NCBI RefSeq assembly: GCF_001194135.2
Contig: NC_068988.1
Span: 34,704,633 to 34,768,632, forward strand
Reading direction: 5' to 3'
DNA length: 64,000 nt
From: Octopus bimaculoides
Lineage: Eukaryota
Below, in pieces: positions 2,004-62,432 of this stretch. Numbering within the stretch: the first letter of the stretch is position 1; every line of letters begins with the position of its first letter. Position numbers and translations under genes: made by a program. Below the pieces are notes generated by a model. It saw only the letters and a list, made by a program, of their open reading frames with translations. It had not been told where the DNA came from and made no database searches.

Positions 2004-2934
2004 TCAGTGTTTACTGCCCCTAGCATTTTCAACACTCAAAAACGCTATCTTCCCAGTTAGCCTTCCTTTGATATTGCTGCACCTCTTATGTGTCCATAGC
2101 TTACACCAAGTACATCTTATGGAGTTTCTACCTTCGCCTTTTCTACAGGTCAAGCAGGGCCATCTACCTGAAGGGATTTGTGGTTTGTCTGCCTTCCTAC
2201 TTATTAAGACTTTGGTTTTTGCTAGATTGACTCTAAGGCCCTTCGATTCTAGACATTGCTTCCACACCTGAAACTTCTCTAGTTCTGATAGTGACTCAGC
2301 TATTAGGGCAAGGTGATCAGCATAGAGGAGCTCCCAGGGGCATCCTGTCTTGAATTGCTCTGTTATTGCTTGGAGGACTATGATGAATAAGAGAGGGCTG
2401 AGGACTGATCCTTAGTGGACCCCTACTCCTACCCGGAATTCTTCACTGTACTTATTGCCAACCCTCATGCTACTGACAGGATCCCTGTACAGATAAGGGA
2501 TTGGGAACCCTGTCAAAGGCTTTCTCCATGTCAAAAGCCAGGTACAGAGATTTATTGTTGGCTAGGTATTTCTCCTGTAGCTGTCTTACCAGAAATATAG
2601 CATCCGTGGTGTTTTCTCACTGATAATCTCCCTAATGCCATTGGGAGATATTTCCCAAACTGACTATCTTCCTAATTAGTTGGGCTGTGACCTTCTTCAT
2701 GACTTTCATTACCTGATTCAGTAACTTGATAGCTCTGTAATTATTCATATCTAATGCATCACCTTTACCTTTGTAACAGTTGACTATGGTGCTGCTACAC
2801 CACTCATTGGATATGACTCCTTCATGTATCACCTGGTTGACAATACAGTTGACTTGGCTATATCCGACACTGCCAGATATTTTGAGCATCTCTGCGTCGA
2901 TTCCTGATGGGCCAGAGACTTTCCTTGTCTTCAT
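2004..2934 (-). pseudogene. Disrupted reverse transcriptase of the RTE element
   Basis: ORF pieces 2632-2934 and 2004-2267 joined by frameshifted RT motifs. The catalytic YADD reads YADH at about 2313-2324. Confidence 0.9.
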
Positions 2935-2960
2935 ACACTTAATTGCTTTATTTACTTATA

Positions 2961-3108: not shown

Positions 3109-3360
3109 NNNNNNNNNNNNNNNNNNNNNNNNNNNNNNNNNNNNNNNNNNNNNNNNNNNNNNNNNNNNNNNNNNNNNNNNNNNNNNNNNNNNNNNNNNNN
3201 NNNNNNNNNNNNNNNNNNNNNNNNNNNNNNNNNNNNNNNNNNNNNNNNNNNNNNNNNNNNNNNNNNNNNNNNNNNNNNNNNNNNNNNNNNNNNNNNNNNN
3301 NNNNNNNNNNNNNNNNNNNNNNNNNNNNNNNNNNNNNNNNNNNNNNNNNNNNNNNNNNNN
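3109..3360. other. Assembly gap inside a (TA)n microsatellite
   Basis: Run of N flanked by TA repeats. Confidence 1.
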
Positions 3361-6443: not shown

Positions 6444-6585
6444 ATGCTTAGCAGCGTTTTTCCAATCATTATGTTCTGAGTTCAAATTCTGCTGAGCTTG
6501 GCTTTACCTTTGTAATTGATTAGTCCCCTCCTTCACAATTTCAGGCTTTGTACCTATAGTAGAAAAGATTATTATTATTGTTATT
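6444..6585 (+). mobile_element. tRNA-derived SINE family B, internally deleted, (ATT)n tail
   Basis: GTTCTGAGTTCAAATTCTGCTGAG B-box-like head, then ATTTCAGGCTTTGTACCTATAGTAGAAAAGATTATTATT. Confidence 0.8.
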
Positions 6586-6589
6586 ATTG

Positions 6590-6785
6590 TTGTTGCCTTT
6601 GCACAGCTTCTAACACTGGACATGTACTAAAGTGTCAGCTGTTCTGTACCAGTAAACTAAGGTAATACCTCTTATTTTTCGAGCACCTGCTGGAGTATTT
6701 GAGCCGTTCCAAGCAGTGCTGTTTTCTGCAAGTGCTCCTCCCTTATTGCAGCCCCTGTTTGTTCTATGTACTTCTCGAGATTTTT
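6590..6785 (-). mobile_element. 3' end of an R4/Dong-like (RLE) non-LTR retrotransposon
   Basis: Minus strand 6785-6672 translates KNLEKYIEQTGAAIREEHLQKTALLGTAQILQQVLEK*. This matches the LQK.ALLGTA.IL C-terminus typical of R4-clade ORFs and is followed by a short UTR and a TAA/CAA tail. Confidence 0.8.
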
Positions 6786-6859
6786 GCCACTTTCAGGCCT
6801 TGTGGCTACAGTAGAAAAAATTATTTGGTGGATTGGTAGTGTTGTTAGTGTTGGTGTGC

Positions 6860-7035
6860 ATTCTGATTTTGTTCATTCTGAGTTCAGATCCCACAGTGGT
6901 CAGCTTGACCTGTCATTATTTCGAGCTTGATAAAATAAAGTACAAAATAATTACCGGGTTAATATAATCAACTAATGCTGCCAACTACCTGTAAAATTTC
7001 TGGCTTTGTGTCAAAATTTAAAATTGTTGTTGTTG
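6860..7035 (+). mobile_element. SINE family B, degenerate
   Basis: TTCTGAGTTCAGATCCCAC...GATAAAATAAAGTAC...AAATTTCTGGCTTTGTG, matching other B copies. Confidence 0.7.
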
Positions 7036-7067
7036 TTTTGCCCCAATGTCTATGAAGAAAAATTATG

Positions 7068-7096
7068 TTTCTTTGTTTTTCTCTTTGCAGGTAAGT
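7068..7096 (+). promoter_or_regulatory. Candidate recursive splice site (3'SS directly followed by 5'SS)
   Basis: TTTCTTTGTTTTTCTCTTTGCAG|GTAAGT, with 18 of 19 pyrimidines at 7068-7086 and no other AG for 31 nt upstream. No transcript evidence is available. Confidence 0.55.
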
Positions 7097-9005
7097 CTAT
7101 ATCAGCTTTGAAAAAATAAACTGGATACACAATACATTTTATTTTTAACAAATTCCTGCTTTGAGCATTTTTTCTTTGTCAATGGTAAGAAAGTTAATCA
7201 ACATAACATTACTTTTCATTTCTATATTTCATCTTCATTTTCTTAGGATATTTTATTCTTGTTTTCATCATGATTTTGTGTATTTTGATTTTTTTCCTCC
7301 CACTATTTTTACACATAAGACTTGAGTCCATGATTAGATTAGTGACATATCTAAATATTAAAAAAAGTTATTTATTACTTTACACAAAACACAAGGTAAG
7401 AATATTCATCCGTCATGCTACTTCCCATTATGACAAATCTTTAATATGTTGACATATAATGAGCAGAAGCATTAACTAATGATAGGGATGGAGATTAAAA
7501 CTAGTCACTCAAAGTTGATAGGGTAGATTAAAAACTGTGACATTGTTACTCTTTCCAAAATTATTTGCAAAAGTCTTTGGGATACCTGTCTTCTGGAAAT
7601 TGAGCTTTAGTTACAAACTTAGTTTGATAGAAGCTTCCCTATATTACAATATTTGACAGAAAACACACACAGAAGCACTCCAACTCTCTCTTTCACGTGT
7701 GTGCGCCCCCCCAAAAACCTGGTAAAGCAGTGCACAAGATATCATTTGTGCGTATGTGTTTGTACATACATGTACAGTATAATTACCAATTAAAGATGTG
7801 ATTTTCTCTGTTCTTATTCTTGTTGTTTTATACTCTGAATTTCTTGAAATTCTTCGAAGAGATATTTGAAGTTACTTGTCATACATGAAGAATTACCTTA
7901 GATGTTAATTCTACTTGCATTTATTGGTATTTGATTGATTGATATAGTTAACCACATTTACTTAACACTGTGTGTTTTTTTGCTATCTGCCTGGGTTTAT
8001 TAATCCTTCTTACTTCTTCTATGTGTACATATACATATGTGTGTGTGTGTGTACATAGGAAAAAAAAAAAACATTCAGCAGATGTCGTGGGGGGTCAAAT
8101 ATTTGTATTGATGTTGACCTAAGTATATACTGAGTCAAACTGTTAATACAAATACACATGTATGCAACATGCACACACATGACGGACTTCTTAAATGTTC
8201 CAGCATACCAGCTTCCATTCACGAGGAATCAGTCAATCAGTGGCTATATCAGAAGAAACTTGCACATGGTCTTGACACAGTGGGATCAGACTCATAACTT
8301 TTTGGTTATGATGCAAAACTTCTTAAGCAGACAACCATGCCTCTATGAATTCCACCCACAGATAAGGTATCTGTCTACACCAGCACATGTATGACTATAG
8401 GAACATCGTGAGATTTGTGAAGCAATTCTGTGAAGCAGATATTTGTGATATTTAAATTTGAAATGAGTGGCTCACTCTCAGTAAATACCTCGTATGCTAA
8501 TAGCAATTACAAGAGCCAAAGCCACATAAATACCCACTAAACAGCATTACAGCTTACAAATAATAGTAATTTAACATTACAAAATTCACTTTTCTATCAG
8601 ATTGAATCAACACTTAATGTTTTTGAAATTACCTCCCCTTTGAGAATCTTTGACAGTTGCCATTACTTTTCCTGTTTTCTTTTTTTCCTCCCTTTGTTTG
8701 TTGTTTGCTTTCTCCAACAAAAAGGTAAATGTCTTCGTTAAGGAAAGTATTTTACTTAAATCATTAAGTATATCACCTACTTAACATTACATTAGTTGTC
8801 TGTGACATTAGTCATTATTTAAAATATATCTCATGTGAAGCTTTCTTTTCATAATTAAAAATGTAAGAAAGTAATTTCTCATTCCATTGATCATCTTTAG
8901 AGATGGAAAATGCTTTAATATTTATACCTGCACTATATTTCAATTGGTTTGATGACCAATCATTATTGTGTGTCACAATCATGGATTTGTACATAGCACC
9001 AGACT

Positions 9006-9410
9006 TATCTTTTATTTACCTTTCAACTTTTACCTGTTTCGACCATTTGGCTGTAGCCATGGTGGGGCACCGTGTTGAAGGGTTTTAGTCAAATAAATCA
9101 ACCCAAGTACTTATATTTTGAAGTTTGGCTCTTATTCTCTTTGTCACTTTTGTCAAACTTAAAATTAGGAGGATGTATGCAAACCAACACTGGTCAAGCT
9201 GATGAGGTTCACACACACACACACATGCGTGCACACGCACCCACTCACACACACACACACACACACGATAGACTTCTTTATTTTACATCTATCACAAGTC
9301 TTTGGTCAGCCCAGGCTTGTAGAAGATTCAATGTTCCATGCAGTGGGATTGAACCCAAAACTATGTGGTTTGGAAGCAAACTCCTTACTACACAGACATG
9401 CTGATGCCTA
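9006..9410 (-). mobile_element. SINE family A1
   Basis: Reverse-complement homology to 4269-4692 with an internal (CA)n. Confidence 0.8.
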
Positions 9411-9530
9411 TTTCTAAAGTATCAGTGGCCTAATGGGTAAGAATGATTATTACCATTAATTTAGAAATAAAGTTTTCTAGTTTCAAATCCAGTCAAGACA
9501 CTATCAGACTAACTGAAACATAGTATAGAT

Positions 9531-9700
9531 CATCATCATCATTTAACATCCATGTTCCATGCTGTCATGGCTTGGACAGTTTGACAGGATCTAATGTTTC
9601 CAAGGACTGCATCAAGCTCCAATGTCTGCTCTGGCATGGTTTTTATGGCTGGATGCCTTTTCTAGTGGAGTGGGTGCTTTTTTCATGCCACCTGCACTGT
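9531..9700 (-). mobile_element. RTE-type 3' tail fragment, diverged
   Basis: CATCATCATCATTTAACATCCATGTTCCATGCTGTCATGG...GGCTGGATGCC. Confidence 0.75.
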
Positions 9701-11810
9701 TCAGGTCACCAAGTCGTTCACAAAACTATGAGCCCTGGGTGGGGGTGGAGGGGTTAACTTCATGCTAGGGTACAAGCAGATTACTATGGGGTGGGGACAG
9801 AGAATACTCCTGTAGAGGGATCTGCATGACTACACACATCTAGTGGGGGAAAGAGTGGAGGAGAAAGAAAAAGTGATTAGGATGACATCTGATGCCATTC
9901 AGGCATTCCACTTTCCGAAACAACATTTAGATATAAATATTATTAAACAATGTTTTTCACTTCTATAGATGAGGTTAATAGCATGGAAAATGATAATCTT
10001 ATTAACTACGACTCATTTCAGACATTTTGACATTTATGTAACAGTGGAATATATGATTTTGTCTTTACATGTGACTAGTTTACAGAACCTAACACATATA
10101 TTATGAATCATACACAACTCTTTAAAGGCGCCTGACAATGCATCTTCAAAACAGTGTCTATATGTGCTCTTTCTTAAGTACATGCCCTCTTTGAATATAT
10201 ATAAAATTTAGATGAAAATATATCGTAGAAGTAAGTCATTGTTAAAATTCTTCCTCAAATATTTAAGTACTAATCCAAAGAAAATAATGTTGTGTTGTTT
10301 TTTTCCTTTGTTAGTATTATGTCTGTTTTTCTATACTAGCAGAGGTTTGAGGAATACTTGAATACTTATAATGAGGCATTGTTTTTTCTGTCAGATGCTT
10401 TCTTGCCACTGACTCTCTACCTTTCACTTAGCTTTGAAAGTGCAAGTTTAGAGGCTGATATGTTGACAAAGAATGTGAATGACACCACCATTTTTTGCTC
10501 TTTTGCTCAATGCTTTCATGTAAAGATGAAGAATGTTAACATTCATGTACCCCACAGACATACGTTGCTGCATACACACATGCACACACATGATGGGGTG
10601 GGTTCTATCCAGTTTCTATCTACCAATTTCACTCATAAGGTATCAGTAACCTGGAACTACAGTGGAAGACCTCTGCCCAAGTTACCATATGGTTATAAAG
10701 TGAATTCCATATCCACACGGCTATGCCTGTGCCTTGTCTTAATAAAGTTATAGCATGAGGAGAAGAGACAGTATATATAGCCTTTTAGCTATCTAGCTAG
10801 TATGGTTGATCAGGATAATGCTCGACATAAACTTCATCAGGTGGATGCCATTGAGAAAACATAGACAGGTAGGTACACCTTTGTGGTGGTTGTTTTGGTT
10901 TGGAAAAGTCTGAATAAAAAGTTTAGAGTAGAGTTTGGAGTCATAGCTCAGTTAGGATGATGAAAGGGTGAAATGCACTTGAATTAGGTAAGCATGGATG
11001 GGCAAGAGTACCCCACTTTCTATTTTAGAAAGGTAAATCTGTTTGTAGAATCAGAAGAAACAGTAGGGAAGATATTACATTTCAGTATGTTAGTATTTGT
11101 TGTAGGTTAACTAGTGAAGTTTTGCCAATTTGAAATGCACATTGAGTTAATAAATCTCTCATTTGACAACTGACAGCCTAAGCAGATAATCTATAACAGA
11201 TGAGGCCTTAGAATAATATTGTCAGCTTCATGCATGAAGTATAACATAAAATGCTCGCTGAACTGTTATATCATATGATATTTGACACCACAAATGGATC
11301 TTTCATATTCAAAAAATATTGAATGTTCAGCATTGTGTTCCACGCTCAGCAGTCATCTTCAGAAATGAGTGATGCATATTTAAAATACTGATGCAATAAT
11401 AAATAACATTAGTTATTAAGCTAGATACAGCACCATGCTGTGATAAAAATTTGATATCAGGGAAAAAAAGAAAAACACAGCGATTATAATGCCAATGAAA
11501 ATCATTCATTTGGTGTGCTTGTATATAAAGATCGTGTTTATATGCACTGAGATTGACCTGAAGATTCTACTTCATACATGCATTTACCCATGATTGGCAC
11601 ACATCATGACATATACATAAAGGTGTCCACATAGCTTTATTGAAGCATGCACACATAAATATACACACTTGCATGGAAACAGATGTGGGATAGCATCAGG
11701 AAGAGCATTTGACCATAGAAATCTCTGCCTCAATGTAATTTTGTCTGACCCATAGAAGCATGGAAAAGCAGATTAAAATTAAAACAGTAGTAATCTTGAT
11801 GACGACTTAC

Positions 11811-12004
11811 ATCATCATCATCGTTTAACGTCCGCTTTCCATGCTAGCATGGGTTGGACGATTTGACTGAGGACTGGTGAAACCGGATGGCAACACCAGG
11901 CTNNNNNNNNNNGAAACCGGATGGCAACACCAGGCTCCAGTCTGATTTGGCAGAGTTTCTACAGCTGGATGCCCTTCCTAACGCCAACCACTCAGAGAGT
12001 GTAG
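11811..12004 (-). mobile_element. Young RTE-type 3' tail copy with a candidate TTACAT target-site duplication
   Basis: Near-identical reverse complement of 1-173. TTACAT at 11807-11812 and 12005-12010. A 10-N gap lies inside. Confidence 0.85.
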
Positions 12005-12397
12005 TTACATATACACGTATAAACTTAAATCTTTATATGCAGTTATATCATTCATACACACAACCATGTAATGCAAACACATTCAGGAAGGTAAACAACT
12101 GAGCTAATTGCATATGCTTAATTTATGTGTATGAACATACATATACATTTACAACATGATCGTCATGTGTCAACACTTATCTAGTTACATATAGCTTTAT
12201 GAATGTCATCATCATCATCATCTCCATTTTATGATCAGTTTCCATACTGGCATTGGGTGGGTAGGTCATTGTGGTTTGAATCAATTCTCATTCACTGTTA
12301 ATGTCTTCCAGGAAAGGTTAGTGACCACATATTGCTTGTGTGTGTGTGTGTATCTCCTTTGCCAACATGGAAGGCGGATGTTAAACGATGATGATAA

Positions 12398-12432
<35 letters not shown>

Positions 12433-12670
12433 NNNNNNNNNNNNNNNNNNNNNNNNNNNNNNNNNNNNNNNNNNNNNNNNNNNNNNNNNNNNNNNNNNNN
12501 NNNNNNNNNNNNNNNNNNNNNNNNNNNNNNNNNNNNNNNNNNNNNNNNNNNNNNNNNNNNNNNNNNNNNNNNNNNNNNNNNNNNNNNNNNNNNNNNNNNN
12601 NNNNNNNNNNNNNNNNNNNNNNNNNNNNNNNNNNNNNNNNNNNNNNNNNNNNNNNNNNNNNNNNNNNNNN
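12433..12670. other. Assembly gap
   Basis: Run of N after (TA)n. Confidence 1.
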
Positions 12671-13194
12671 GGAGACAATGGAAGATGTATAAGCAGATAG
12701 ATAGACAGATAGATAGATAGACAGACAGATAGAGAGATGGATGTGGTAAAAGAGAGAGAGAGAAGGGCCATTGTATTGAAATGGTCTTTTTAAGGAGTGT
12801 CAAATAAATAAAAAAATAAATAAATAAATAAGGGTAAACACTTGTTTACTATTTACTTCATTGTTTTGAGAGGGTTTCTAGGGATGGTAAGAGAAGGAAA
12901 AAGAGAGAAGAAAAAATACAGAATAATAAATAGAAACTATAAATAAAACAAAAAATGTCTTCCTGTTTTTTCTTTATTTTTTTAGTTGAGTTGTATTTAG
13001 AATATATTCCTGTCATACATTCATTTATTTAATTATATTTGGTAAGGTGTAGTTCTGCATGAGTATATATTAGTATAATATTTGTAAATTTGAAAAATCA
13101 ATTAGTAAAAATAACTGTATATATCATATCATACCCACACAAATATACATATATGTACATACAAAACGTATTTCTTGCCTTTCTTTTTTCTCTT

Positions 13195-13750
13195 TCAAAC
13201 ATTTAACTTCGGTGAAATTGTTTTTATGAAGCGCAGTTTCATTGCCTTTCGGTATTGTGGATCGTCCCGTGTACATTTATAAAAGGGAAAGATTTTGAAC
13301 TTTCCGTCTCCGCATATTTCCAGATGTTTACTCAATGGAATCATTCTTAGTTCTTCTTGTCGGATATGTTGCCTGTGAATTCTTGCACGTTGGCAAAGTG
13401 AGTTATTTGTTTCGCCAATGTAATTTTCTTTACAGTTTGGACAGGTGATGCAGTATATGAGATTTTGTGTTTTGCAGTTCATATCTGCATTTATTTTAAA
13501 AATAGATCCGTTCTTGAACTTTATGTGGAAACCACTTTCTATGTATTTGTAGTTGTTGGTATTGTTACACGTTCCACATCTCCTATCACCACATTCTTTT
13601 ACTATGAATTCTGGTTTAGTCTCTGATCTGAATTCTGCCCTTGTCAGGTGTTTTTTAAGGTTTTTTGGTTGGCGTCTGCTATTCCGTAAGGTGTTTTTTT
13701 CAATCAGAGTTTTCATCTTGGGGCTTTGAAGGAGTATAGGGAACTTGCAA
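13195..13750 (-). mobile_element. Penelope-like element fragment encoding a GIY-YIG endonuclease (ORF 13195-13716)
   Basis: CGDRRCGTC, NCKTQNLIYCITCPNCKENYIGET, RARIHRQHI and the terminal FIKTISPKLN follow the Penelope C-terminal GIY-YIG layout. The frame stays open upstream (FPILLQSPK). No RT is present. Confidence 0.9.
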
Positions 13751-13879
13751 GTTTCACCTGTCTACCAATATTTTTTATCTAAAGAAATGCCATGAACTCA
13801 GATTGGTACAGCTTGGCGTTAGTGTCATCATCGTTGTTGCTTTCAGAAGGCGAAGAACCAGAAGAGACACCATGAGGTA

Positions 13880-14040
13880 TCTTGCCTTACACTAACAGTT
13901 TCACCAATCTTCCACCTTGGAGAAGTACTCTATTTTTCATCTACACTGAAGTGGGGCAGAGTTGACCTTAGCGTGATTTGATCTAAGAGCTCTGTGTGTT
14001 GAAATACATACAGTGAGGCATTCTTTCCAATGCTCTAATG
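13880..14040 (-). mobile_element. SINE family B, degenerate
   Basis: GGGGCAGAGTTGACCTTAGCGTGATTTGATCTAAGA...AATGCTCTAATGACTC, similar to other minus-strand B copies. Confidence 0.55.
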
Positions 14041-14729
14041 ACTCTTACATGATGAAATGTTGAGTTATGTTTTCGTGTAAGCTTACATATTTATGCAGGC
14101 ATGTTCTCTCTCTGGCTCTCTCACACATACACACCAATTGTGCACTCTTATACAAATAGCTAATATAGACTTATAGACACTCACACACAGACACACCAAA
14201 TGGTTACTCAGAGCAACATACAAACTTAATGGATACACATGATCATAATATACACACACTTATACCAACTGCAATCTTATACATGCATACTTAGTAAGCC
14301 ATCTCTTTCTCTCTCTCTTTCACGCATGCGCGTGCGCACATGCACACACCTAATACAACCATAATAAGCTTCATTATTTTTACTGTTCTGTGTTGTTCCT
14401 GTCTGGAATGTCTGCTATAGAGATCATTTCTCACCATTTTCAATTTATATAGGCACCAACAAAACATTATTTCCTTCTTCCAAACCCAAACATTTCCTTC
14501 TTAGCTGCTTCTTTAAAATACACACCCATTCCAATATTCTTTTCATGCTTCCTGGTATCTATGGTTACTCCCCTAATGAATCATCTTAATTTTGCAGCTC
14601 TGATGTAAATGGTATAATTTACCTTGACGGGAAGTAACTGTTGAGTCTAGGTCACATAGTTTTTATGTTTGTTTTGTAATCAACTATCTTTTTTTTATTT
14701 TTCTCTTCTTTTTTTTTGGCGGGAGTATC

Positions 14730-15095
14730 TATCTTTTACTTCTTTCTGTCATTGGACTGTGGTTATGCTGGGTCACTACCTCGAAGGGTTTAGCCAAGCA
14801 AATTGATCCTAGTACTTATTTTTTATGTTTGGTACCCATGCTATTGGTCTCTTTTGTCAAACCACTAAGTGATGAGGACATAAACAAGACAACATCTGTT
14901 TTCAGGTGGTGAGGGGGAGACAAAGACACACACACAACATATATACATACACAGAGGCTTCTTTCAGTTTCTGCCTGCTTTGGTCAGCCCATGGCTTTCG
15001 TAGAAGACCTTTTCCCAATATGCTCTACAGTGGGACTGAACCCAAAACCACATGGTTGGGAAGCAAAGCAACTACATAGCTATGCCTGTGCCTAT
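14730..15095 (-). mobile_element. SINE family A1
   Basis: ATCTTTTACTT...CAGTGGGACTGAACCCAAAACCACATGGTTGGGAAGCAA...GCTATGCCTGTGCC. Confidence 0.85.
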
Positions 15096-16337
15096 CTCAA
15101 CCACACACCGATGCCTGCATTTAAGGGATATTTTCTTTCTTGTACATTTTTGAAGTGGTAAGGATGGCTAGTTCATTTTGTCATCAAATACCAGCCAATT
15201 TTGAGGGCTTAGGCATGTGAGTTTGAAATGAGGGTATGGACTTCTCATTTCATAGTGAGGTTGCATATTTCTCAGTTTGTGATGAAGGTGTACACTTATT
15301 TCTCAGTGTTATGTCATTAATAATAAAAAAATTATTATTGGGATGTAGATTTTATTTATTATCTTGGACATAGGGCCTAATTCAAGTCTATCATTGAAGT
15401 CTTATGATAAAGTGTTTATCGAAATAATGCAGTTGTCACATGCACTCCCTTTCCTCTGCTGACCTTGACTGAATTAGCAAATAAAGCTGTAGTCACATGC
15501 AAAACACACCATTAAGGAAAACCCTCTTGACACAGAAAGGACAACCATGTTAAATCAAATTAACCTTCATCACATGATCATCAGGTTGAGTTACCTGGCA
15601 CTAATGCAAAACATATGCAGCACTACTTTGATAAAACAATGATACTACATTTGGCATAAAAGGAGGGTGCACAGATATATGCATGGAAGAGGAGATGGTT
15701 ATCATAGACATGTTAACCCAGAGAGGGTATGTAGCTCTGAATTTATAATAAAGATATCAAGCTGTGAAGACTATGCTTGCATTACTAGGTAGTAGGTTGA
15801 GGGGCTAGACTCTTATGCTAAGGGTGTAGATCTGTTAGTTCATAATAAGCATGTAGATCTCATTGATAATGAGGGCAGAGACCCCTCTCTTAATACTGTT
15901 GTTGTAGACCCATCTGTTACATTTTGAAGTTGGAGATCTATCAACTCAATTAAGTGCAGGCAGTTTTCTCAGTTTGCATCTTGCTTTTTGGGTTCATCTT
16001 TTGGGCACAAGCAGACTTCTGAACTCAACTTGTGAGCACTGAAAGCACACACAGACAATATTTCAGCTTGTAGGAGCTATATTATTTCAAAACATACTCC
16101 TCTAACAAAACATATTACATTTACACATTTATTTGGTATTATCATTTATTTTATGAAGCCTGTGGTATAAGAATAGAGGTTAACCATTTCTTACAATTCT
16201 TTTTATTGGAGCTATTTCAGTTCCTACACACCACTGATGTAATAACAGTAACCATAAACATTTTAACTACTCATTTCTCCTATCCTAAAATTTTGTATTT
16301 TTTTATACTGGTTTATATAACGTTGCAAAATTGTATT

Positions 16338-26527: not shown

Positions 26528-26970
26528 CTTGGGTTGTAAGCTGGCAGAATCATTTGCGTGTTGGACAAAATGCTTTGTAGCATTTCTTCCAGCTCTTTAT
26601 GCCCTGAGTTCAAATTCCACTGAGGTTGACTTTGTCTTTCATCCTTATGGAGTCAATAAAATATGTACCAGTCAAGTACTGAGGTCAATGTTATTGCTTA
26701 AACCCCTCTCCCAAAATTTCAGGCCTTGTACCTAGAGTAGAAAAAATTATTATTATTATTATTATTAAGATAGCAAATTAGCAGAACTGTTAGCACACCA
26801 GGTGAAATGCTTTGCAGCATCTTGTCTGTCCTAATATCCTGAGTTCAAATTGCTTTACATCCATTTGGGTTGATAAATTAAATACCAGTTGAGCACTAGG
26901 GTTGCTGTAATCGACTAGTCCCTTCCTTGCAAATTTCAGGCCTTGTGCCTTTAGTAGAAAGGAGTTAAGA
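26528..26970 (+). mobile_element. Two head-to-tail SINE family B copies joined by (ATT)n
   Basis: Each runs (CTG/TTA)GCAGAA...CTGAGTTCAAATT...AAATTTCAGGCCTTGT...AGTAGAAA; spacer ATTATTATTATTATTATTAAG at about 26747-26768. Confidence 0.85.
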
Positions 26971-27262: not shown

Positions 27263-27924
27263 NNNNNNNNNNNNNNNNNNNNNNNNNNNNNNNNNNNNNN
27301 NNNNNNNNNNNNNNNNNNNNNNNNNNNNNNNNNNNNNNNNNNNNNNNNNNNNNNNNNNNNNNNNNNNNNNNNNNNNNNNNNNNNNNNNNNNNNNNNNNNN
27401 NNNNNNNNNNNNNNNNNNNNNNNNNNNNNNNNNNNNNNNNNNNNNNNNNNNNNNNNNNNNNNNNNNNNNNNNNNNNNNNNNNNNNNNNNNNNNNNNNNNN
27501 NNNNNNNNNNNNNNNNNNNNNNNNNNNNNNNNNNNNNNNNNNNNNNNNNNNNNNNNNNNNNNNNNNNNNNNNNNNNNNNNNNNNNNNNNNNNNNNNNNNN
27601 NNNNNNNNNNNNNNNNNNNNNNNNNNNNNNNNNNNNNNNNNNNNNNNNNNNNNNNNNNNNNNNNNNNNNNNNNNNNNNNNNNNNNNNNNNNNNNNNNNNN
27701 NNNNNNNNNNNNNNNNNNNNNNNNNNNNNNNNNNNNNNNNNNNNNNNNNNNNNNNNNNNNNNNNNNNNNNNNNNNNNNNNNNNNNNNNNNNNNNNNNNNN
27801 NNNNNNNNNNNNNNNNNNNNNNNNNNNNNNNNNNNNNNNNNNNNNNNNNNNNNNNNNNNNNNNNNNNNNNNNNNNNNNNNNNNNNNNNNNNNNNNNNNNN
27901 NNNNNNNNNNNNNNNNNNNNNNNA
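27263..27924. other. Assembly gap
   Basis: Run of N after (CA)n. Confidence 1.
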
Positions 27925-28540: not shown

Positions 28541-30530
28541 NNNNNNNNNNNNNNNNNNNNNNNCCACACACACACGTATTCACATACATCATAAGAAGAA
28601 CAGTATTTCTGGCAGTGGTTTGTGTACTGTGTTCAAATGTGGGTTGAGGTTGTGGGCATGGGGGTTCCAATAGAATTTTTCTGATTAATCAATGTCCACT
28701 CCTCTGTTATCTTACTTCCCATATCTGTATTGCTCATTCTCTCCCACCTTTCTCTCTCCTCATGAGTTGTGGATCCCCCCTTCCCATTATCTCACTCTTA
28801 TTTGCATCCTGCTCTCAGTTTTTCTCTTTCTAAGCTGCTGTCTGTATATTTGTCTGTCCTTCTCTAACCTCCCTCACACACACACACACACACACACTGG
28901 CTGTTTTCTGCCTTCTTTGATTTCCTTCCCCCTCTCTCTCTCTTTCTCTTCCTCTCTATCACTACTGAGGGAAGTAGAGGCTCTCATTCTATCACTTCTA
29001 ATTTTTTTCATCTTCAGTTTATGGGAAATGAGCACATCTAGTTTTCTGATTTATACTTCCAAATTCAGATACTGATTTGACTTTCTATTATTACTGTGAT
29101 AATGCTAGTGCATTGGAAAAATCATTAGAACTTTAGACAAAATATCTTGAGGTATTTCTTCCTTACCTTAAGTTCTATGTTCAAATTTAACTGAGGTTAA
29201 CTTTACTTTTCCTTCCTCTGAGGATGATAATGTGCAAGTCCTGTAGTGTTGACGAAGACATTGAATAACACCATTTTCCTTTCATTGTTCTGGGGTTGAT
29301 AAAGAACCAGGCTATGATAGTGAATTGGAGAAATTACTAATATGTGGAATTAGATACTTTGTGGCACTTGCTCCAGCTCTTTGTGTACTGAGTTTAGACT
29401 TTACCTTGGAGCCTAAAAAGCCCACTCACCAATCCAGTATAGTATGTAAGACAAATCTTCAAAACATGCCAACACCATACAGATGCTGCTGGATCTAGTC
29501 AAAAAGTACATATGTATGTGTGTGGGGGTGGGGTCTTCCAGCTGGATCAACAAGTAACCTGATAATCATCCGAGACATAATATGAATTTATATGATACCA
29601 GAAAACAAAAAGTAAGTAAATAAGCAAATTTTGTAATTCCCTTCGGCTACTTTGTTTCTCTTTTCTCTTTCAATATGTGGTTATTTTTTATTTAACCTCA
29701 TGTTAGCCAGTATACATTCAATCAAATTATCAAATGTTTATTGTATGTTTATGACAATGTTATCCACTATGCTCTTTCATAGCTGGGTATGGATTGAGGG
29801 AAATTTTGTTGCTACATTTAGCAGGCTGAACAGGTATCAGCAATATGCAAAAGTTCCCTTTCTTGATCAAGTTGAACTTTCCTTATTGGCTCACTGCTGG
29901 CTTTTGTTTATGAATGGGCTTTTTTTATGGTGAAAGACTGTAATGGCTTTTAGTTCACAGTTGTGCCTATTATAAAAAAAAAAAAAAAAGAAATGAAGAC
30001 AGGTCCTGAAGAGCAATCAAAGAAGATCAATGGTTCCTATGTTATTGCTGGCATTGCATAATGGCAAGCAAGGATCAAGAAACTTTGTTCTCTATCATGA
30101 AGACCACTCAACTGTGAAGCAGGTACTGTCAGTGTGGTTACAGTTCATTACCCCAAACTATAGCTACATTGTAGAAATAATACATTGGCTTGCACTTCTG
30201 AGACTGTTAATCTTGGGGTGAGGTGTGGAATTGAGATTTATCTTTCATCTGATTATCACTGCAGAAACTTGCCACTTGCATGGATCCATATGACGATACA
30301 CAGATCCATGAACTAAACATAGCTCTTGTTAGCTGGCACCTACTTGACAGTCAGCCATGGAAGGACTCACACAGAAGTGGCTTTCTATTAGGCCAAAGCA
30401 TGATGTATCTTGCAAGTGTGCTCAATCTGTGGAACGCTCCCCTGTGCATTTAATTGGTCACCTCCGTGCCAAAGGTTTGCTTACTTGAGTAATTTCCTGC
30501 AGCTACTTCAAATGTAACTTCCAGCAATAC

Positions 30531-39250: not shown

Positions 39251-40065
39251 TGTTTGATGTGTGTGTATATATATAGACACACGCATGCACATATGTATAT
39301 GTGTGTGGATGGGTATATATATATATATATATGTCTACATACACATATGTATATGTGTGTGTTCATTTATAAATGTATAAGTATTTGTATATATAGTGGA
39401 AGAACTGGTTAAGTTGCCAATGACATGACAGTGCAACAGATCGTGTGAGATGACATGTTACCAGGCTGTCAGTGTTAAGGGTTGCTAGAAACCCAACAGG
39501 ATTAAAACAATGCATATCAAATGGACAGAGGAGTTAAACATATGGTCAGTTGATGTAAAACCCATGGATTGTCAGTCCAGTTGTTCTATCTGAAAAAGCG
39601 TGTGCATTTCTATACACTATTCACTCTCTATAATCAATTTTATTCACAGGAATGTTTTGGAAAACACACAATGGATCTTTCACACAGTCCGGTAGTGATG
39701 GGGAGTAGAGGAAGTATGTAATTTCAAAACCTGCATGTAGGTAGCTAGGAAATCTGGGGATCTTATCTTTGAAACTATGGTAATGGCAAGATTTGGCAGC
39801 ACTTCAAGTACTTGAGCCATCTTTTTCAGAGATAATAGTTCTTACCTGTTAATCAGGAAAGACCTCATACAGGTGCTCTAAACAAAGCTTCCCATATTTT
39901 GGAACTGGCCATCTATCCCACAGCTAGCAATTGTGTTCTCTTTGTGGGCTTCCATGATAGCATCTGAGAAATTTACAATTTTCCAAGAAGTGGATATATA
40001 GGGACTTCAGTTGACTTTCACTATATATGTATTGACATGTATATGTATATATGTGNNNNNNNNNN

Positions 40066-40109
<44 letters not shown>

Positions 40110-41254
40110 CGTATTTATATAAATGTAAGTATATGCATATGCGGGTATGTGTGTGCCTGTATATATGTATATGTATGCTTATATTACACAGATGTATGTA
40201 TATGTATGTGTGTATGTATCTATATATACAATATAGACATATGTTTTGATGTGTGTGTGTAATGTTGTCTGTATGTATATATGAATGTACAATATATATG
40301 TGCATGTATATATACACTTATACTTACATACAAATGTATATATGCTCATATATATATATATTTATATATATACACATGTATTTATAATTGTATATATATA
40401 TATGTATGTACAAAAATCTGTTTCTTCTTTAATAACAGGAATAGGAAAACATTATTCATAGCTGGATCTTGCATAACCTGCCATCAGGCATGACAAATGT
40501 GATAATGTTTATATGTATGGGTTGTCTGCGTGTGTGTGTATACACATGTATATGCATGTTGTTGCATTGCTGTGTATCGGAATGTGAATGCGTTTGCATC
40601 AGTTCACAGTTTCTCTGTCCATCTCTCTTTCTCTCTCTCTCTCTCATGCATGCATGTGTCAGGAACTGATGCTGTGTCAAAATAAGATGCAGCATGACAT
40701 CTGTCAAATGAAAGGAAAGTATTATCTCACTTTGATGTCCGATTTAACTTTCTTCTTTGCCACCACTGAGCTGTCAGCTGCATACCCCCCCTCTCTCTCT
40801 CTCTCTCTCTCCCTCCATCTCTTCCTTCACCAATCCACTTCACCTTGTTAGTGCACTAATACTACCTTTCTCTCTCTTTCACTTTTTTTTCTTTTTCTAG
40901 CACACTTATATTCTTTCTGTTTCTTCAGAAATTGATGCTTTGTCTTCTTATTCTTCTTTTTCTTTTATCTTCTTCCTCCTGTTTTTCTTTATTTCTCTCT
41001 TTCTCCCATCTCTCACTCCTGTTTCCCTCCCCCTCTCTAATTGTATGTCTGTGTGTGTGTCACTCTTTCTCTGCATGACCCTTTAAAATTTTCCTCCTTC
41101 TTTCATTTTCTTCCTTTTCTACTCCTTCACTTTTCCCTCTCCTATCCACTTCCTCTATGTTTCAGTCTCCCATTCTCTAACCTTCACTCTCTCTATCTCA
41201 ACTTCTCTCTCTCTCTCAATCTCTAGCCTTCACTGTGTCTTTCTTTATATACAT

Positions 41255-41470
41255 CTACATCTCCCTCTCTCTCTACATCTCCCTCTCTCTCTACATCTCC
41301 CTCTCTCTCTACATCTCCCTCTCTCTCTACATCTCCCTCTCTCTCTACATCTCCCTCTCTCTCTACATCTCCCTCTCTCTCTACATCTCCCTCTCTCTCT
41401 ACATCTCCCTCTCTCTCTATATCTCCCTCTCTCTCTACATCTCCCTCTCTCTCTACATCTCCCTCTCTCT
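41255..41470. repeat. 18-bp minisatellite (CTACATCTCCCTCTCTCT) x12
   Basis: Direct reading; one unit has a CTATATCT variant. It produces the SLSLYI and CRERGR pseudo-ORFs. Confidence 0.95.
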
Positions 41471-42027
41471 CTCAACCTCTTTTTATCTCTTCTCTGCTCT
41501 CAGCATCTCCCACTTTCCTTTTGGTTTAGCTCTCTCAACATCTCAGTCTCTCTAATTCTCACTCACTTTTCTGTTGTTCTCACTTCTCTTTCATGTATTG
41601 TTCTTTTGGTAGTTGTTGTAAATAATGTGATTGCCTCTCCATCTGCTGTTGGTGCAGTGTTGATAGACAGATGAGGATGTTGGTGTTGGTGTTGGTGATG
41701 GTGGCAGTGATGGCGTCTTGCTGTTACAGTAATAGTTATAATAGTTGCTGTTGTGAGTGATAAATATGTCTTTGGTACTGGTTCTCTTGGTATGGCATGG
41801 TGTTGGCGGCAGTAATGGTGTTGAATGACTATTGATACTCTTTTTATTGTTGATGCTGTTGTTGCTCTTTGTTGATGTTGTTGTTGTTGTTGTTGTTCAT
41901 TGTTGTTCATATTACCTCATTCAAGGATTGACCTTTATCGCTTTCAAGAGATGTCTTCAGAACTTCTTTGCCAGTTGCATGAGAGCATGTCTATGTCTGT
42001 GTGTGTGTGTGTGTGTTTGTGTTTGTA

Positions 42028-42097
<70 letters not shown>

Positions 42098-43875
42098 TGT
42101 GTGTGCGCTCGTTGGGTGGTGGTGGTGGTTGTGGCAATGGAAGGAAAAGGTGGAAGAGGAGAATTTATTAAGGGTGGAAATTTGCTTTCATTGGTGGCAT
42201 GAAATTGTAAGTTGTGATTTATGGATATCTTCATATAATGAAAAGTTAGAGTGGGAGGAGACTTTTTCTAGGTGGTGGTGGTATTCTAAACGATGTGTGT
42301 GAGGAGATTGGTGATGGTAGTAGTGGAGCACATTATAAGGAATGGTGGTATTTAAAAGATGAATGGGCAGTATGAAATGTATATTCCAAGGTGTGGGTGA
42401 GGCATGATATAGGGCCATTTAGAGATGGGGAAGATGAAGCTAGGAGATTGTTGTTGTCTTATATCTTATTGAACCATTTGAATAGCTTAAATAATTTGTT
42501 TTACCTATGCACCCCCCCCCCCCNNNNNNNNNNNNCCCTACACATAAGATGTAGAGAGAAGGAGAGAAAAGGAGAGAGAAAGAAAAACTGGTTAATTGAA
42601 GGCATTAGAGATAGACATAATTTTTGAAAGAGAAGGAATAAGGCACAAATCAGGACTTTGAAATTATTGTTATCATTATTCATGATATTGATAATAATGT
42701 AGCTGAGTTATTGCTAATTGTAGATGGTGTTGATACTATCATTGATGGTATTTCCATTAACATTGATGTCTATGATGTTGATGGCATTCTTCAATAACAA
42801 TGCTGCAGTGTCGATGTTAGTGAGAATTGTTGACTTCGATATTAGCATTGTTTTTTTGTTTTTTTTTCTGACATTATTGACATTGTGGTTGACATCATTA
42901 TCTATGTTGTTGATAACACTGTTAATTCTGTCATTGATGTTGCTGTTATCCATTGATATTTACATCATTGTTCTTGATATCATGATATCAGTAATATTGC
43001 TGTTTAGGCCCTAGTGGATCTTGATTAAAGGTATTCCAACGTGGACTACTTCTAGAAGGAGCTTTTTGTCTTCTAATACCAAAGATCATTTCTGTTATTA
43101 AACTTTGTTGGTAATCAAAAGCAGAATTTAAGGTTAATGTTGCTACTGTCTCTACAACAGTTGCAGTTGTTGCTACTGCTGCATCCCAAATGAGCAGGCA
43201 GTAGCACTTTTAACTATAGTTTTCTCACCATCTTTTAAGACATATGCTGTTGGATTGGATAACAATATGTGAAAGACAACAAGGTGATTTTTGTGGAGAT
43301 GAGATACATCAAGCTGAACAAAATCAAGGAACAAAATAAATTGCTCCTGGATTTGTTGTTTAGATCCATCCCAGATGAGTCTTCTTCAAGCAGACCTGTG
43401 GATGAAAGGCATTTTAGCCAGGGCCATCCTGTCTCTTTAGAGGCGTCTAGTAATATAATATATGTAGTCTTTCCTTTTACAATAAAGTAGAATTTGATTT
43501 GAGAAAGATTTGGTTGCTATTTCAGATATCCACACAGAAGCTTCCCTAGTGGCTTTATTTTCTAATGTTTGTGTTTAATGATGGTAGAGGAAAAGCAAAG
43601 TAAGATTGTTAATTTAGATTCCACTGTTACAAAAGATAGTATGGACAAGTATGTATGTGTTTCTTTATACTGATATACATATGTATGCATTTGTGTATTT
43701 ATACACACTATACTGCACACAACATGCTTATTTAAATTCTTCAGAAAGGTAAACTGCTATAGATACGTGTTTTTGGAAGGAATGGTGTTGATATTTACTC
43801 AAATAAACACACCCTATATATGTAGTGTGTATTTATGCATGTTTGTAGGGGCATGTGTATATGTATGTATATATG

Positions 43876-47513: not shown

Positions 47514-48325
47514 TCAATGCCTTAAATCTAGCAGTTCAATTCCATAGTCCTCTTTCAGTTTTGTATAATTAGTCCTTTTCGGCAACTTGTCTCTATAGCC
47601 GATGACTTTCCACCAATCAATGCCTTTATCATTCTTTTTTACTATTCCCCATTGTTCTTTGTTTACCAAATAACACATCATAGTCTCACCATCATCATCA
47701 TCCACGAATTCTACTTCCGCCATGTCCTTCCACTCGTTCAATCGTTTTACTATGTCATCCCCCGCGTTCTCATACAGAACGCAAGCAAAACAAACAGGGG
47801 GAGGGGAAATCTTATTTTTATCGTGTGTGTTTGTATTTTTTTCCAGTTTTCTTGTTGGAGGGGATTGGGTAGGTTTGGTGTCTGTATGGGGAGGGTGAGG
47901 TGAAAAGGGAGCGGATGGGCCTTGGGTGGGTTGGGGTTCACAATTACTTACTTTCTTTCTTTTTCTTTTTTTCCTCCTCACGGCTCTTTCCCATTCCTTA
48001 TCTTCTGCAGTTTCTTTTTCCACTTCTTGTCTCCTCTCTTGTGGTGGTGGCTGTCGCTCCTCTACTATTTTGGGTGGTGTAGGGCAGTTCGCTCTTATGT
48101 GTCCCTTCAGGCCACATTTGAAGTAACATGGAACTCTTCCTTCCACCCTAACAGTCATAGTTATTTCGTCCATGGTTATAGACTCTGTAATCTATTCTAC
48201 TGTTTCTTTTGACCCTTGGACTATCATCTCCAGTTGCTGACCTCTCCAGTTAACGCAGTCTTTTTTCTTGGCCTGGAGCACTACTATGTTGTCCTCATTA
48301 CCACAGAGGACTGCATCTGCTACCC
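47514..48325 (-). pseudogene. gag/LINE-ORF1-like zinc-knuckle protein remnant (219-aa open part at 47514-48173)
   Basis: VRVEGRVPCYFKCGLKGHIRANCP (CCHC knuckle, C-X3-C variant), followed by Pro-rich, acidic and basic (RRKKRKRKK) tracts. Protein-like sequence continues upstream (WVADAVLCG...NWRGQQLEMIVQG) across a stop and frameshift. Confidence 0.7.
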
Positions 48326-61585: not shown

Positions 61586-61617
61586 CTCACTTTTGTTAAT
61601 TTTGGTTTCAGGTGAGT
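61586..61617 (+). promoter_or_regulatory. Candidate recursive splice site 2
   Basis: CTCAC (branch-like) TTTTGTTAATTTTGGTTTCAG|GTGAGT, with no other AG between 61462 and 61609. No transcript evidence is available. Confidence 0.5.
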
Positions 61618-62432
61618 TGCAGAATTTACTGGGAATTATTTGGCTTGTGTATGTATTTATTTATATATCTATATCTATATAATATATGTATGTGTGTGTA
61701 TGGGTTTTTATATATGTATATATTTATATATGTATGTGTACACATACACAACACACACACACATGTAGAGTTCACAACTTGAAAGAATCTGAGACCAGGT
61801 CAGTGTCAGTATGTTACTTTGAAAAATTGGTATTTCCTTTGCTTTGTTGCAATGTCTCTCATCATTTTAACACACCTGACAGGCAATTTCTCTTTACACT
61901 AATGCCCCCATCTTTTTTCTTTTACTTTTTTTTTTTGAAGAATGATTTCATTTGAGAGACAAGGCAAGAATAGGCACTAGTATGACCTCTTCACCACAAC
62001 CATCATCATCATCATTATTATTATAACCACTCTATCATACTTTTGTTGTGTGATCTTTGAAAAGGCAAGAACGAGTGTTTAGATTTATTGCAAGGAAACA
62101 AGTATGTCTGTCTGTAGGCAAAGAAATTGTCTTGGATAGAAGAATGCTGTCCTGAATGGTAACTGGGTCTGAAATAGTAGGAGCATTCATAATGCTTTTA
62201 TTTTGGCAGCTATGAAGTCTTAGTACTTAGAGAGAAAGAGAGAGAGAGAGAGAGAAGGAAGGATAATGATGGAAGGACGGAGAAATGGATTTAGTTTCAA
62301 CAATGGAATGCTGCCTTTACCTCGAAGGTATAAATGTAATAAATGAAGTAGTTTTAAATGAGAATGAAGAAGTCTGAGAATTGGTGCTGCAAAAATGTAA
62401 ACCATTATGTTGGCTAAGAAAGAGAAACAAAG

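What the first reader, a model, noticed from the sequence alone, without database searches (positions are those of the whole stretch)
7051..7190. Textbook ratchet-point motif CAG|GTAAGT with a downstream cryptic 94-nt exon
Seen: a 19-nt tract with 18 pyrimidines, CAG at 7088-7090 and a perfect GTAAGT at 7091-7096, in unique non-TE sequence. A second donor, ATG|GTAAGA, at 7185 defines a 94-nt segment closed in all three frames, and a third donor, AAG|GTAAGA, lies at 7396. Established: Drosophila ratchet points and vertebrate RS sites have this AG|GT architecture in very long introns, with a cryptic RS exon defined by a nearby downstream donor. Inference: this is a recursive splice site in a giant cephalopod intron. 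I know of no description of recursive splicing in cephalopods but cannot search.
Basis: partly seen in the sequence, partly recalled or inferred. Interest (0 to 1): 0.8.

Follow-up and report, generated by a model that had tools for sequence, protein, structure and literature searches.

The report
Perfect splice-site motif, function unproven
A textbook back-to-back acceptor/donor splice motif really sits at 7068-7096 in octopus-like non-coding DNA, but dozens to hundreds of such motifs are expected by chance per genome, and nothing available here shows that it is transcribed, conserved or used.

Summary
The sequence facts are all correct. There is an 18/19 pyrimidine tract, CAG|GTAAGT at 7088-7096, ATG|GTAAGA at 7185, AAG|GTAAGA at 7396, and a 94-nt segment closed in all frames.

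The 9-mer alone is at chance level (1 seen, 0.5 expected per window). The composite with the tract is rare per window (about 0.0015) but expected roughly 60 times in a 2.5-Gb genome, and hundreds of times if slightly relaxed. The downstream donor and the closed frames carry no information (chance about 0.4 and 0.58).

Every sequence-level feature of a fly or vertebrate recursive splice site is met. The defining features could not be tested: sense-strand position in a long intron, conservation, junction or lariat reads.

No exon, host gene or orthologous DNA could be found. A transposon fragment is 87% identical to an Octopus bimaculoides protein, so an octopus origin is supported. A steady T>A skew on the + strand gives weak, uncalibrated support for + strand transcription.

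Human data show that most such motifs are used only sporadically. My reading is a fortuitous but spliceosome-competent motif (about 0.5), a regularly used recursive site (about 0.2), or an unannotated non-coding exon (about 0.1). Interest is low to moderate until RNA data are checked.

The parts
7055..7066 (+). Candidate branch-point region: TnA adenosines at 7055 (-36) and 7065 (-26); no full yUnAy match
   Evidence: The positions fall in the -21..-36 range reported for fly ratchet points (10.1101/006163). In AT-rich DNA this is not discriminating.
7068..7087 (+). Polypyrimidine tract, 18 of 20 Y (18 of 19 over 7068-7086), with TT at -5/-6
   Evidence: Only 0.29% of AG dinucleotides in the window have a tract this strong.
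7088..7096 (+). Juxtaposed acceptor/donor CAG|GTAAGT; the only 9/9 match to the U1-complementary consensus on either strand of the window
   Evidence: 1 observed, 0.50 expected by shuffling.
7091..7184 (+). Putative cryptic RS exon, 94 nt (length mod 3 = 1), with stops in all three frames
   Evidence: chance of closure in all frames is 0.58. No unusual RNA structure (z = 0.61).
7182..7190 (+). Downstream donor-like site ATG|GTAAGA (6/9 match), which could define the cryptic exon
   Evidence: Donors this good occur 4.2 times per kb on the + strand.
7393..7401 (+). Second downstream donor-like site AAG|GTAAGA (alternative 305-nt cryptic exon, also closed in all frames)
   Evidence: Three of the nine + strand GGTAAG copies lie within 306 nt (post hoc P about 0.006). 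The clustering is not seen with GTAAG.
6850..7040 (+). Context: SINE-like interspersed repeat in + orientation, third of three adjacent copies (about 6450-6600, 6640-6840, 6850-7040), ending in a (GTT)n tail about 30 nt upstream of the tract
   Evidence: 6876-7024 matches 22217-22077 on the minus strand at 70%; other copies at 26717, 54417, 58139, 62995.

Best explanation
This is most likely a fortuitous juxtaposition of a strong acceptor-like sequence and a consensus donor in T-rich, repeat-flanked non-coding octopus DNA. It is probably not a selected, regularly used recursive splice site.

The composite is fully competent on paper. If the + strand is transcribed inside an intron, the spliceosome could use it occasionally. 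The upstream exon would be joined to 7091, the GTAAGT donor regenerated, and the 94-nt segment removed with the rest of the intron. Nothing would remain in the mRNA, so such a site is neutral and tolerated.

Shown: the motif, its rarity per window, its expected abundance per genome, and the absence of any detectable exon or gene in the window. Inferred: that it is unselected and at most sporadically used.
For: - The 8-mer and 9-mer are at chance frequency.
- The composite expectation is about 0.0015 per window, which scales to about 60 sites per 2.5-Gb genome at this exact stringency and hundreds when relaxed. Genome size is from my own knowledge of octopus genomes.
- The supporting details carry no information. 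A downstream donor is present at 40% of comparable sites, and closed frames have P = 0.58.
- Acceptor-like sites are common on both strands, 20 and 17 per window.
- No protein-coding exon was found in 113 candidate segments, and there was no Rfam hit.
- In humans, a large-genome species, only about 1% of strong, conserved intronic AGGT sites had junction support in the cells studied, and 16 of 36,870 showed a saw-tooth. By contrast, 60% have some junction read in 70 billion reads, meaning sporadic use (PMC6110456).
- RS at fixed sites is rare in mouse brain (PMC8797253, abstract) and no more common in lungfish than in humans (10.1101/2024.12.11.627982, abstract).
Against: - At this stringency the motif is rare: P is about 0.002-0.008 per window.
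- It matches the fly ratchet-point consensus in every scored position, including TT at -5/-6, which is found in 99.5% of fly ratchet points (10.1101/006163).
- The + strand shows T>A in 27 of 32 2-kb bins. That is the direction generally seen on the coding strand of transcription units (PMC5786239).
- In Drosophila 91 of 160 motif-plus-conservation predictions proved real (10.1101/006163). If octopus resembled flies, where 63% of introns over 40 kb carry RS sites (PMC6110457), real sites could outnumber chance ones.
- Three GGTAAG copies within 306 nt is unusual, although this was noticed post hoc.
Confidence: 0.5

Rival explanations
1. It is a genuine recursive splice site (a ratchet point with a cryptic RS exon) in a long intron of a + strand gene.

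1. The 3' splice site at 7090 is recognised by exon definition, with U1 bound at 7185 (or 7396) and a branch point near 7065.
2. The upstream exon is ligated to 7091, which regenerates a donor xxx|GTAAGT.
3. That donor out-competes the weaker ATG|GTAAGA, so the 94-nt segment is always skipped and the intron is removed in two or more pieces.
4. If the competition fails, the 94-nt stop-containing segment is included as a poison exon.
For: All testable sequence features are met.
- 18/20 pyrimidine tract, TT at -5/-6, C at -3, 9/9 donor.
- The downstream donor is weaker (6/9). The cryptic exon is 94 nt, out of frame and full of stops, as described for fly RS exons (PMC8605326) and human RS exons (PMC6110456).
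- The + strand T>A skew is consistent with + transcription (PMC5786239).
- No exon was found in 64 kb, which is compatible with a very long intron.
- A second, weaker RS-like motif, TTTCAG|GTGAGT, lies on the same strand at 61611, and there is no comparable site on the minus strand.
Against: - No evidence of transcription, host gene, strand or conservation.
- The motif is expected by chance tens to hundreds of times per genome.
- There is no yUnAy branch-point match.
- A SINE-like repeat lies within 50 nt upstream. This shows the flank is not under broad constraint, although it does not disrupt the core.
- Only one or two RS-like motifs occur in 64 kb, whereas fly introns are cut into 9-18 kb pieces.
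- Vertebrate data show a low predictive value for the motif alone.
- Recursive splicing has not been reported in any mollusc.
Confidence: 0.2
2. It is the boundary of a real but unannotated non-coding exon. Either 7091-7184 (or 7091-7395) is a UTR, lncRNA or poison cassette exon whose first six bases happen to read GTAAGT, or an exon ends at 7090 and GTAAGT is its ordinary donor.
For: - There is a strong acceptor and a usable donor 94 nt downstream, a typical exon length.
- Donor-like GGTAAG motifs cluster at 7090, 7184 and 7395.
- Fly and vertebrate 'expressed RS exons' have exactly this layout (PMC8605326).
Against: - Both candidate exons are closed in all frames, so they cannot be coding.
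- No protein or RNA-family match was found.
- An exon ending at 7090 would consist of a SINE tail and a T-tract.
- No transcript data could be consulted.
Confidence: 0.12
3. The motif belongs to a transposable element or repeat consensus, so many near-identical copies exist genome-wide and the splice-like signals are incidental to the element.
For: - Three SINE-like copies lie directly upstream, the last ending about 30 nt before the tract.
- The window is densely populated with repeats.
Against: - Homology to the other repeat copies in the window stops at about 7024-7040.
- Region 7041-7600 has no other copy in the window.
- No protein-level match was found for any frame across 6963-7653.
Confidence: 0.05

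Closest known systems
Drosophila intronic ratchet points with cryptic RS exons (Ubx, kuz, Bx, luna; Duff et al. preprint 10.1101/006163; Joseph & Lai PMC8605326; Pai et al. PMC6110457)
   Same: - Juxtaposed (Y)n TT NCAG|GTAAGT.
- The ratchet-point donor is stronger than a nearby downstream donor.
- The cryptic exon is short, out of frame and contains stops.
- Candidate branch adenosines lie at -26 and -36.
   Different: - Fly ratchet points are defined by junction reads, saw-tooth coverage, lariats and ultraconservation, and they sit in sense orientation in introns of 11-133 kb. None of this is known here.
- The cryptic exon is longer here (94 nt against about 50 nt).
- The genome is about 20 times larger, so chance motifs are far more numerous.
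- The density of RS-like motifs in the window is lower than in fly RS introns.
Vertebrate recursive splice sites with RS exons in long neuronal genes (Sibley et al. 2015 as summarised in PMC6110456; Zhang et al. PMC6110456)
   Same: - AG|GT site with a strong acceptor.
- An RS exon defined by a downstream donor.
- The reconstituted donor is stronger than the RS-exon donor.
- A large genome with long introns.
   Different: - Vertebrate sites were accepted only with conservation plus junction reads.
- The motif alone had roughly 1% support in the cells studied (342 of 36,870).
- The gene, strand, conservation and reads are all unknown here.
Intronic pseudoexons and decoy splice-site pairs (sequence-competent but unused or sporadically used sites; e.g. 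the DMD pseudoexon review PMC7175933)
   Same: - A strong acceptor and donor at exon-like spacing in non-coding DNA.
- No coding capacity.
- Adjacent to interspersed repeats.
- Adequately explained by chance.
   Different: The zero-length AG|GT juxtaposition with a perfect 9/9 donor is a special, rarer case. If used, it would leave no trace in the mRNA.

Membership tests
Recursive splice site (ratchet point / RS exon) | [quoted passage not shown] | tested here: met
   18/20 Y followed by CAG|GTAAGT.
Recursive splice site (ratchet point / RS exon) | TT at positions -5/-6 (99.5% of fly ratchet points; 10.1101/006163) | tested here: met
   -6,-5 = TT; -3 = C.
Recursive splice site (ratchet point / RS exon) | Branch-point adenosine about 21-36 nt (fly) or 20-50 nt (human) upstream | tested here: inconclusive
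   TnA adenosines at -26 and -36 but no yUnAy match. This is expected by chance in AT-rich sequence.
Recursive splice site (ratchet point / RS exon) | Downstream donor defining a short cryptic exon, weaker than the regenerated donor; exon out of frame or stop-containing | tested here: met
   The donor at 7185 scores 6/9 against 9/9. The segment is 94 nt with stops in all frames. Each element is at chance level (40% and 0.58).
Recursive splice site (ratchet point / RS exon) | Location in sense orientation inside a long intron (over about 5-10 kb) of an expressed gene | tested here: inconclusive
   No exon, gene or ncRNA was detectable in the window. The only indirect hints are T>A skew on the + strand in 27 of 32 bins and three TE ORFs on the minus strand.
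Recursive splice site (ratchet point / RS exon) | Evolutionary conservation of the SA|SD core relative to its flanks | not testable with these tools
   No cephalopod genomic DNA could be reached. The protein-word search across the site, exact ORF look-ups and a metagenome scan all returned nothing.
Recursive splice site (ratchet point / RS exon) | RNA evidence: upstream-exon-to-RS junction reads, saw-tooth coverage, lariats from the regenerated donor | not testable with these tools
Protein-coding cassette exon | Open reading frame across the exon and similarity to known proteins | tested here: not met
   Stops in all three frames for 7091-7184 and 7091-7395. No protein hit for any frame across 6963-7653.
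Repeat-derived (exonised SINE/TE) splice site | The splice signals lie within the repeat's homology to other copies | tested here: not met
   Repeat homology ends at about 7024-7040, and 7041-7600 has no second copy in the window. This was not tested genome-wide.

The most novel reading that the evidence does not exclude
Position 7090|7091 is a constitutively used recursive splice site, with a skipped 94-nt RS exon, in a giant intron of an octopus gene. It would be the first recursive splicing described in a mollusc or lophotrochozoan. That would imply that the RS-exon mechanism shared by flies and vertebrates is ancestral to bilaterians and helps cephalopods process their very long neuronal genes.
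Probability: 0.2. Interest if true: 0.6.

Novelty: new member of a known kind. Interest (0 to 1): 0.25.

Why it matters
If the site were shown to be used, it would extend recursive splicing from insects and vertebrates to cephalopods. No paper in the searchable library links the two: 'recursive splicing' with 'octopus' returned nothing, and with 'cephalopod' it returned one paper that I did not open, holding one occurrence of each term and neither in its title or abstract. It would also give an entry point for asking how octopus processes its very long introns.

As it stands, this is one motif instance whose existence chance explains at genome scale. Its main value is as a prompt for a genome-wide test, comparing sense and antisense enrichment of the composite in long introns and looking for junction reads. 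It is not a discovery in itself.

Tried and rejected
**Retrieving orthologous or transcript DNA through spurious ORFs**
- The exact look-up of ORF 7270-7452 found nothing.
- A 712-aa concatenation of all six-frame segments across 6963-7653 gave no hit among 5.8 billion proteins.

**Finding the host gene**
- I ranked six-frame segments by amino-acid composition and GC content.
- A 4968-aa concatenation of 113 non-repeat segments gave no hit.
- Exons shorter than about 30 aa, UTR exons and lncRNA exons would have been missed.

**Locating the source contig and other sequence searches**
- Exact look-ups of the transposon ORFs were not on record.
- A metagenome scan for a 26-mer across the junction gave 0 matches.
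- Rfam on the whole window, looking for intronic snoRNA or miRNA as a strand marker, found nothing.
- RNA folding of 7040-7200 was unremarkable (z = 0.61).

**Strand patterns tested and dismissed**
- The strand domains of GGTAAG looked striking. Eight of nine + copies lie in 7.1-15.2 kb, with a runs-test P of 0.001.
- The pattern vanishes for GTAAG, GGTRAG and AGGTA (P = 0.13, 0.56, 0.17). I treat it as a post hoc fluctuation.
- AATAAA depletion on the + strand (65 against 92) is no larger than the T>A base skew alone predicts (A/T)^4 = 0.59 against 0.71 observed, so it is not independent evidence.

**Idea rejected**
- The motif is not part of the adjacent SINE-like repeat, because the homology stops about 30-45 nt upstream.

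Full report
**Observation**

- Positions 7068-7086 read TTTCTTTGTTTTTCTCTTT, which is 18 of 19 pyrimidines.
- G is at 7087, CAG at 7088-7090 and GTAAGT at 7091-7096.
- ATG|GTAAGA has its GT at 7185, and AAG|GTAAGA has its GT at 7396.
- The 94-nt segment 7091-7184 has stops in all three frames, as does 7091-7395.
- Positions -6/-5 are TT and -3 is C.

**Is it more than chance?**

The core is not.
- AGGTAAGT occurs twice on both strands against 2.57 expected from dinucleotide-preserving shuffles.
- CAGGTAAGT occurs once against 0.50 expected, and 37 of 100 shuffles have at least one copy.

What is rare is the combination with the tract.
- Of 7484 AG dinucleotides on both strands, only 22 (0.29%) are preceded by at least 18/20 pyrimidines. 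At the 16/20 level the count is 115 (1.5%).
- Multiplying gives about 0.0015 composites per 64-kb window at the observed stringency.
- That is small for one window. An octopus genome of about 2.5 Gb (my own knowledge) holds about 40,000 such windows, so roughly 60 equally perfect sites are expected by chance. Allowing GTRAGT or a slightly weaker tract raises this to hundreds.

The other elements of the finding add nothing.
- Donors with at least 6/9 matches occur 4.2 times per kb on the + strand. One lies within 300 nt of 8 of the 20 comparably strong acceptor-like sites.
- A 94-nt segment is closed in all frames with probability 0.58 in this composition.

The only local oddity is that three of the nine + strand GGTAAG copies fall within 306 nt (scan P about 0.006). 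This was noticed after the fact, and it disappears for GTAAG, where both strands reach three copies in 320 nt.

**Surroundings**

Region 6970-7600 is unique within the window, but it is not far from repeats.
- Three SINE-like copies in + orientation lie at about 6450-6600, 6640-6840 and 6850-7040. They are recognised by their mutual similarity and by further copies at 22.1, 26.7, 54.0-54.4, 58.1 and 62.9 kb.
- The last copy ends in a (GTT)n tail about 30 nt before the pyrimidine tract.
- Homology stops at 7024-7040, so the splice-like signals are not part of the repeat.

The window is typical repeat-rich animal DNA, with many microsatellites and seven assembly gaps.
- A LINE fragment with RVT_1 and a PHD finger lies at 2007-2411 on the minus strand, with further open frames of the same fragment up to 2955 that have no family hit.
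- A Penelope-like GIY-YIG ORF lies at 13198-13761 on the minus strand.
- The LINE fragment is 87% identical to a UniRef protein of Octopus bimaculoides.

**Gene context**

This is the decisive unknown, and I could not resolve it.
- No long ORF looks like an exon.
- A 4968-aa concatenation of the 113 most protein-like non-repeat segments found no relative among 5.8 billion proteins. That database does contain O. bimaculoides entries.
- Rfam found no intronic snoRNA or miRNA, nor any other RNA family.
- Spurious-ORF searches, exact look-ups and a metagenome scan gave no orthologous or transcript DNA.

Indirect hints favour + strand transcription but are weak.
- T exceeds A on the + strand by 6.6% overall and in 27 of 32 2-kb bins. 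There is no G/C skew.
- The literature states that T generally exceeds A on the coding strand of transcription units (PMC5786239, citing Touchon 2004). I could not calibrate this for octopus.
- The three protein-coding transposon fragments are all on the minus strand, which is too few to mean much.
- A second, weaker RS-like motif (TTTCAG|GTGAGT, 14/20 Y) lies at 61611 on the + strand. No comparable site exists on the minus strand.

**Comparison with known recursive splicing**

Fly ratchet points have a pronounced pyrimidine tract, TT at -5/-6 in 99.5% of cases, and branch points at -21 to -36. They lie in introns of 11-133 kb and are strongly conserved, and 91 of 160 predictions based on motif plus conservation were verified (10.1101/006163).

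They work through a short cryptic RS exon of about 50 nt. That exon is out of frame and poorly conserved. Its donor loses the competition with the regenerated ratchet-point donor (PMC8605326).

In flies, 63% of introns over 40 kb carry RS sites, which cut them into pieces of about 9-15 kb (PMC6110457).

The present site meets every sequence-level item, with the branch point only loosely matched (TnA at -26 and -36, no yUnAy).

The experience from large genomes is sobering.
- In humans there were 36,870 strong, conserved AGGT sites in long introns. Of these, 342 had junction support in three cell lines and 16 showed a saw-tooth.
- However, 60% had some junction read among 70 billion ENCODE reads (PMC6110456).
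- RS at fixed sites is rare in mouse brain (PMC8797253, abstract) and no more common in lungfish than in humans (10.1101/2024.12.11.627982, abstract).
- A competent motif in a sense intron is therefore likely to be touched by the spliceosome now and then, but it is unlikely to be the main pathway.

**How it would work if real (inferred)**

1. U2AF and U2 bind the tract and a branch point near 7065, helped by U1 at 7185 through exon definition.
2. The upstream exon is ligated to 7091.
3. The new junction recreates xxx|GTAAGT. This donor out-competes ATG|GTAAGA, so the 94 nt leave with the downstream part of the intron.
4. If the competition failed, a 94-nt frameshifting, stop-containing exon would be included, and the mRNA would be a target for nonsense-mediated decay.

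**Weighing**

I put the chance that the + strand here is intronic at roughly 0.4. This combines the prior for a given strand of an octopus genome with the skew.
- Given that location, sporadic use is more likely than not, and regular recursive splicing is perhaps 0.2-0.5, depending on whether octopus behaves like flies or like vertebrates.
- This gives about 0.2 for a genuine, regularly used RS site.
- It gives about 0.12 for an unannotated non-coding exon boundary.
- It gives about 0.5 for a fortuitous motif that is inert or only sporadically used.
- I found no report of recursive splicing in cephalopods. If confirmed, the site would be a new member of a known kind in a new phylum.

**Verdict**

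The interpretation cannot be decided with the data reachable here. The motif alone does not justify the original interest of 0.8. Looking up the annotation, examining total RNA-seq and aligning a few octopus genomes would settle it.

Noticed in passing
window 61590-61620 (+): A second recursive-site-like motif, ttttggTTTCAG|GTGAGT (14/20 Y, TT at -5/-6, C at -3), lies 54.5 kb downstream on the same strand, embedded between TG/TA microsatellites. No comparable site exists on the minus strand.
   Followed up: partly
whole window, + strand: There is a persistent T>A skew of 6.6%, with T>A in 27 of 32 2-kb bins and no G/C skew. The direction is the one reported for the coding strand of transcription units, but I could not calibrate it for octopus.
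   Followed up: partly
window 7090-15162 (+) versus 16789-61365 (-): GGTAAG shows strand domains. Eight of nine + strand copies lie in 7.1-15.2 kb, and 13 of 15 minus-strand copies lie beyond 16.7 kb (runs test P = 0.001). The pattern is absent for GTAAG, GGTRAG and AGGTA, so it is probably a small-number fluctuation.
   Followed up: yes
window 2007-2955 (-): LINE fragment. Segment 2007-2411 has a reverse-transcriptase domain (RVT_1) followed by a PHD-type zinc finger. The fragment is broken by frameshifts and is 87% identical to an Octopus bimaculoides UniRef protein, which supports an octopus origin of the window. The open frames at 2473-2616 and 2635-2955 have no Pfam hit.
   Followed up: partly
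window 13195-13761 (-): Penelope-like element fragment: an open 173-188 aa frame with a GIY-YIG nuclease domain, about 57% identical to RT+GIY-YIG proteins in the database.
   Followed up: partly
window 47514-48191 (-): An intact 219-aa ATG ORF (225-aa open frame) with a CCHC-like knuckle (CYFKCGLKGHIRANC) and a lysine/proline-rich middle. It looks gag-like. It has no Pfam hit and its exact sequence is not on record.
   Followed up: partly
window 6450-7040 (+): Three adjacent SINE-like repeat copies lie in the same orientation, with a B-box-like GAGTTCAAAT/GATCC and (ATT/GTT)n tails. Further copies on both strands lie at 22.1, 26.7, 54.0-54.4, 58.1 and 62.9 kb.
   Followed up: partly
window 41254-41472: A nearly perfect tandem array: 12.2 copies of the 18-nt unit TCTACATCTCCCTCTCTC at 99% identity.
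   Followed up: no
window 3109-3360, 11903-11912, 12433-12670, 27263-27923, 28541-28563, 40056-40065, 42524-42535: Seven runs of N with variable length (10-661 nt), mostly flanked by microsatellites. These are scaffold gaps of a short-read draft assembly, so local distances are approximate.
   Followed up: no
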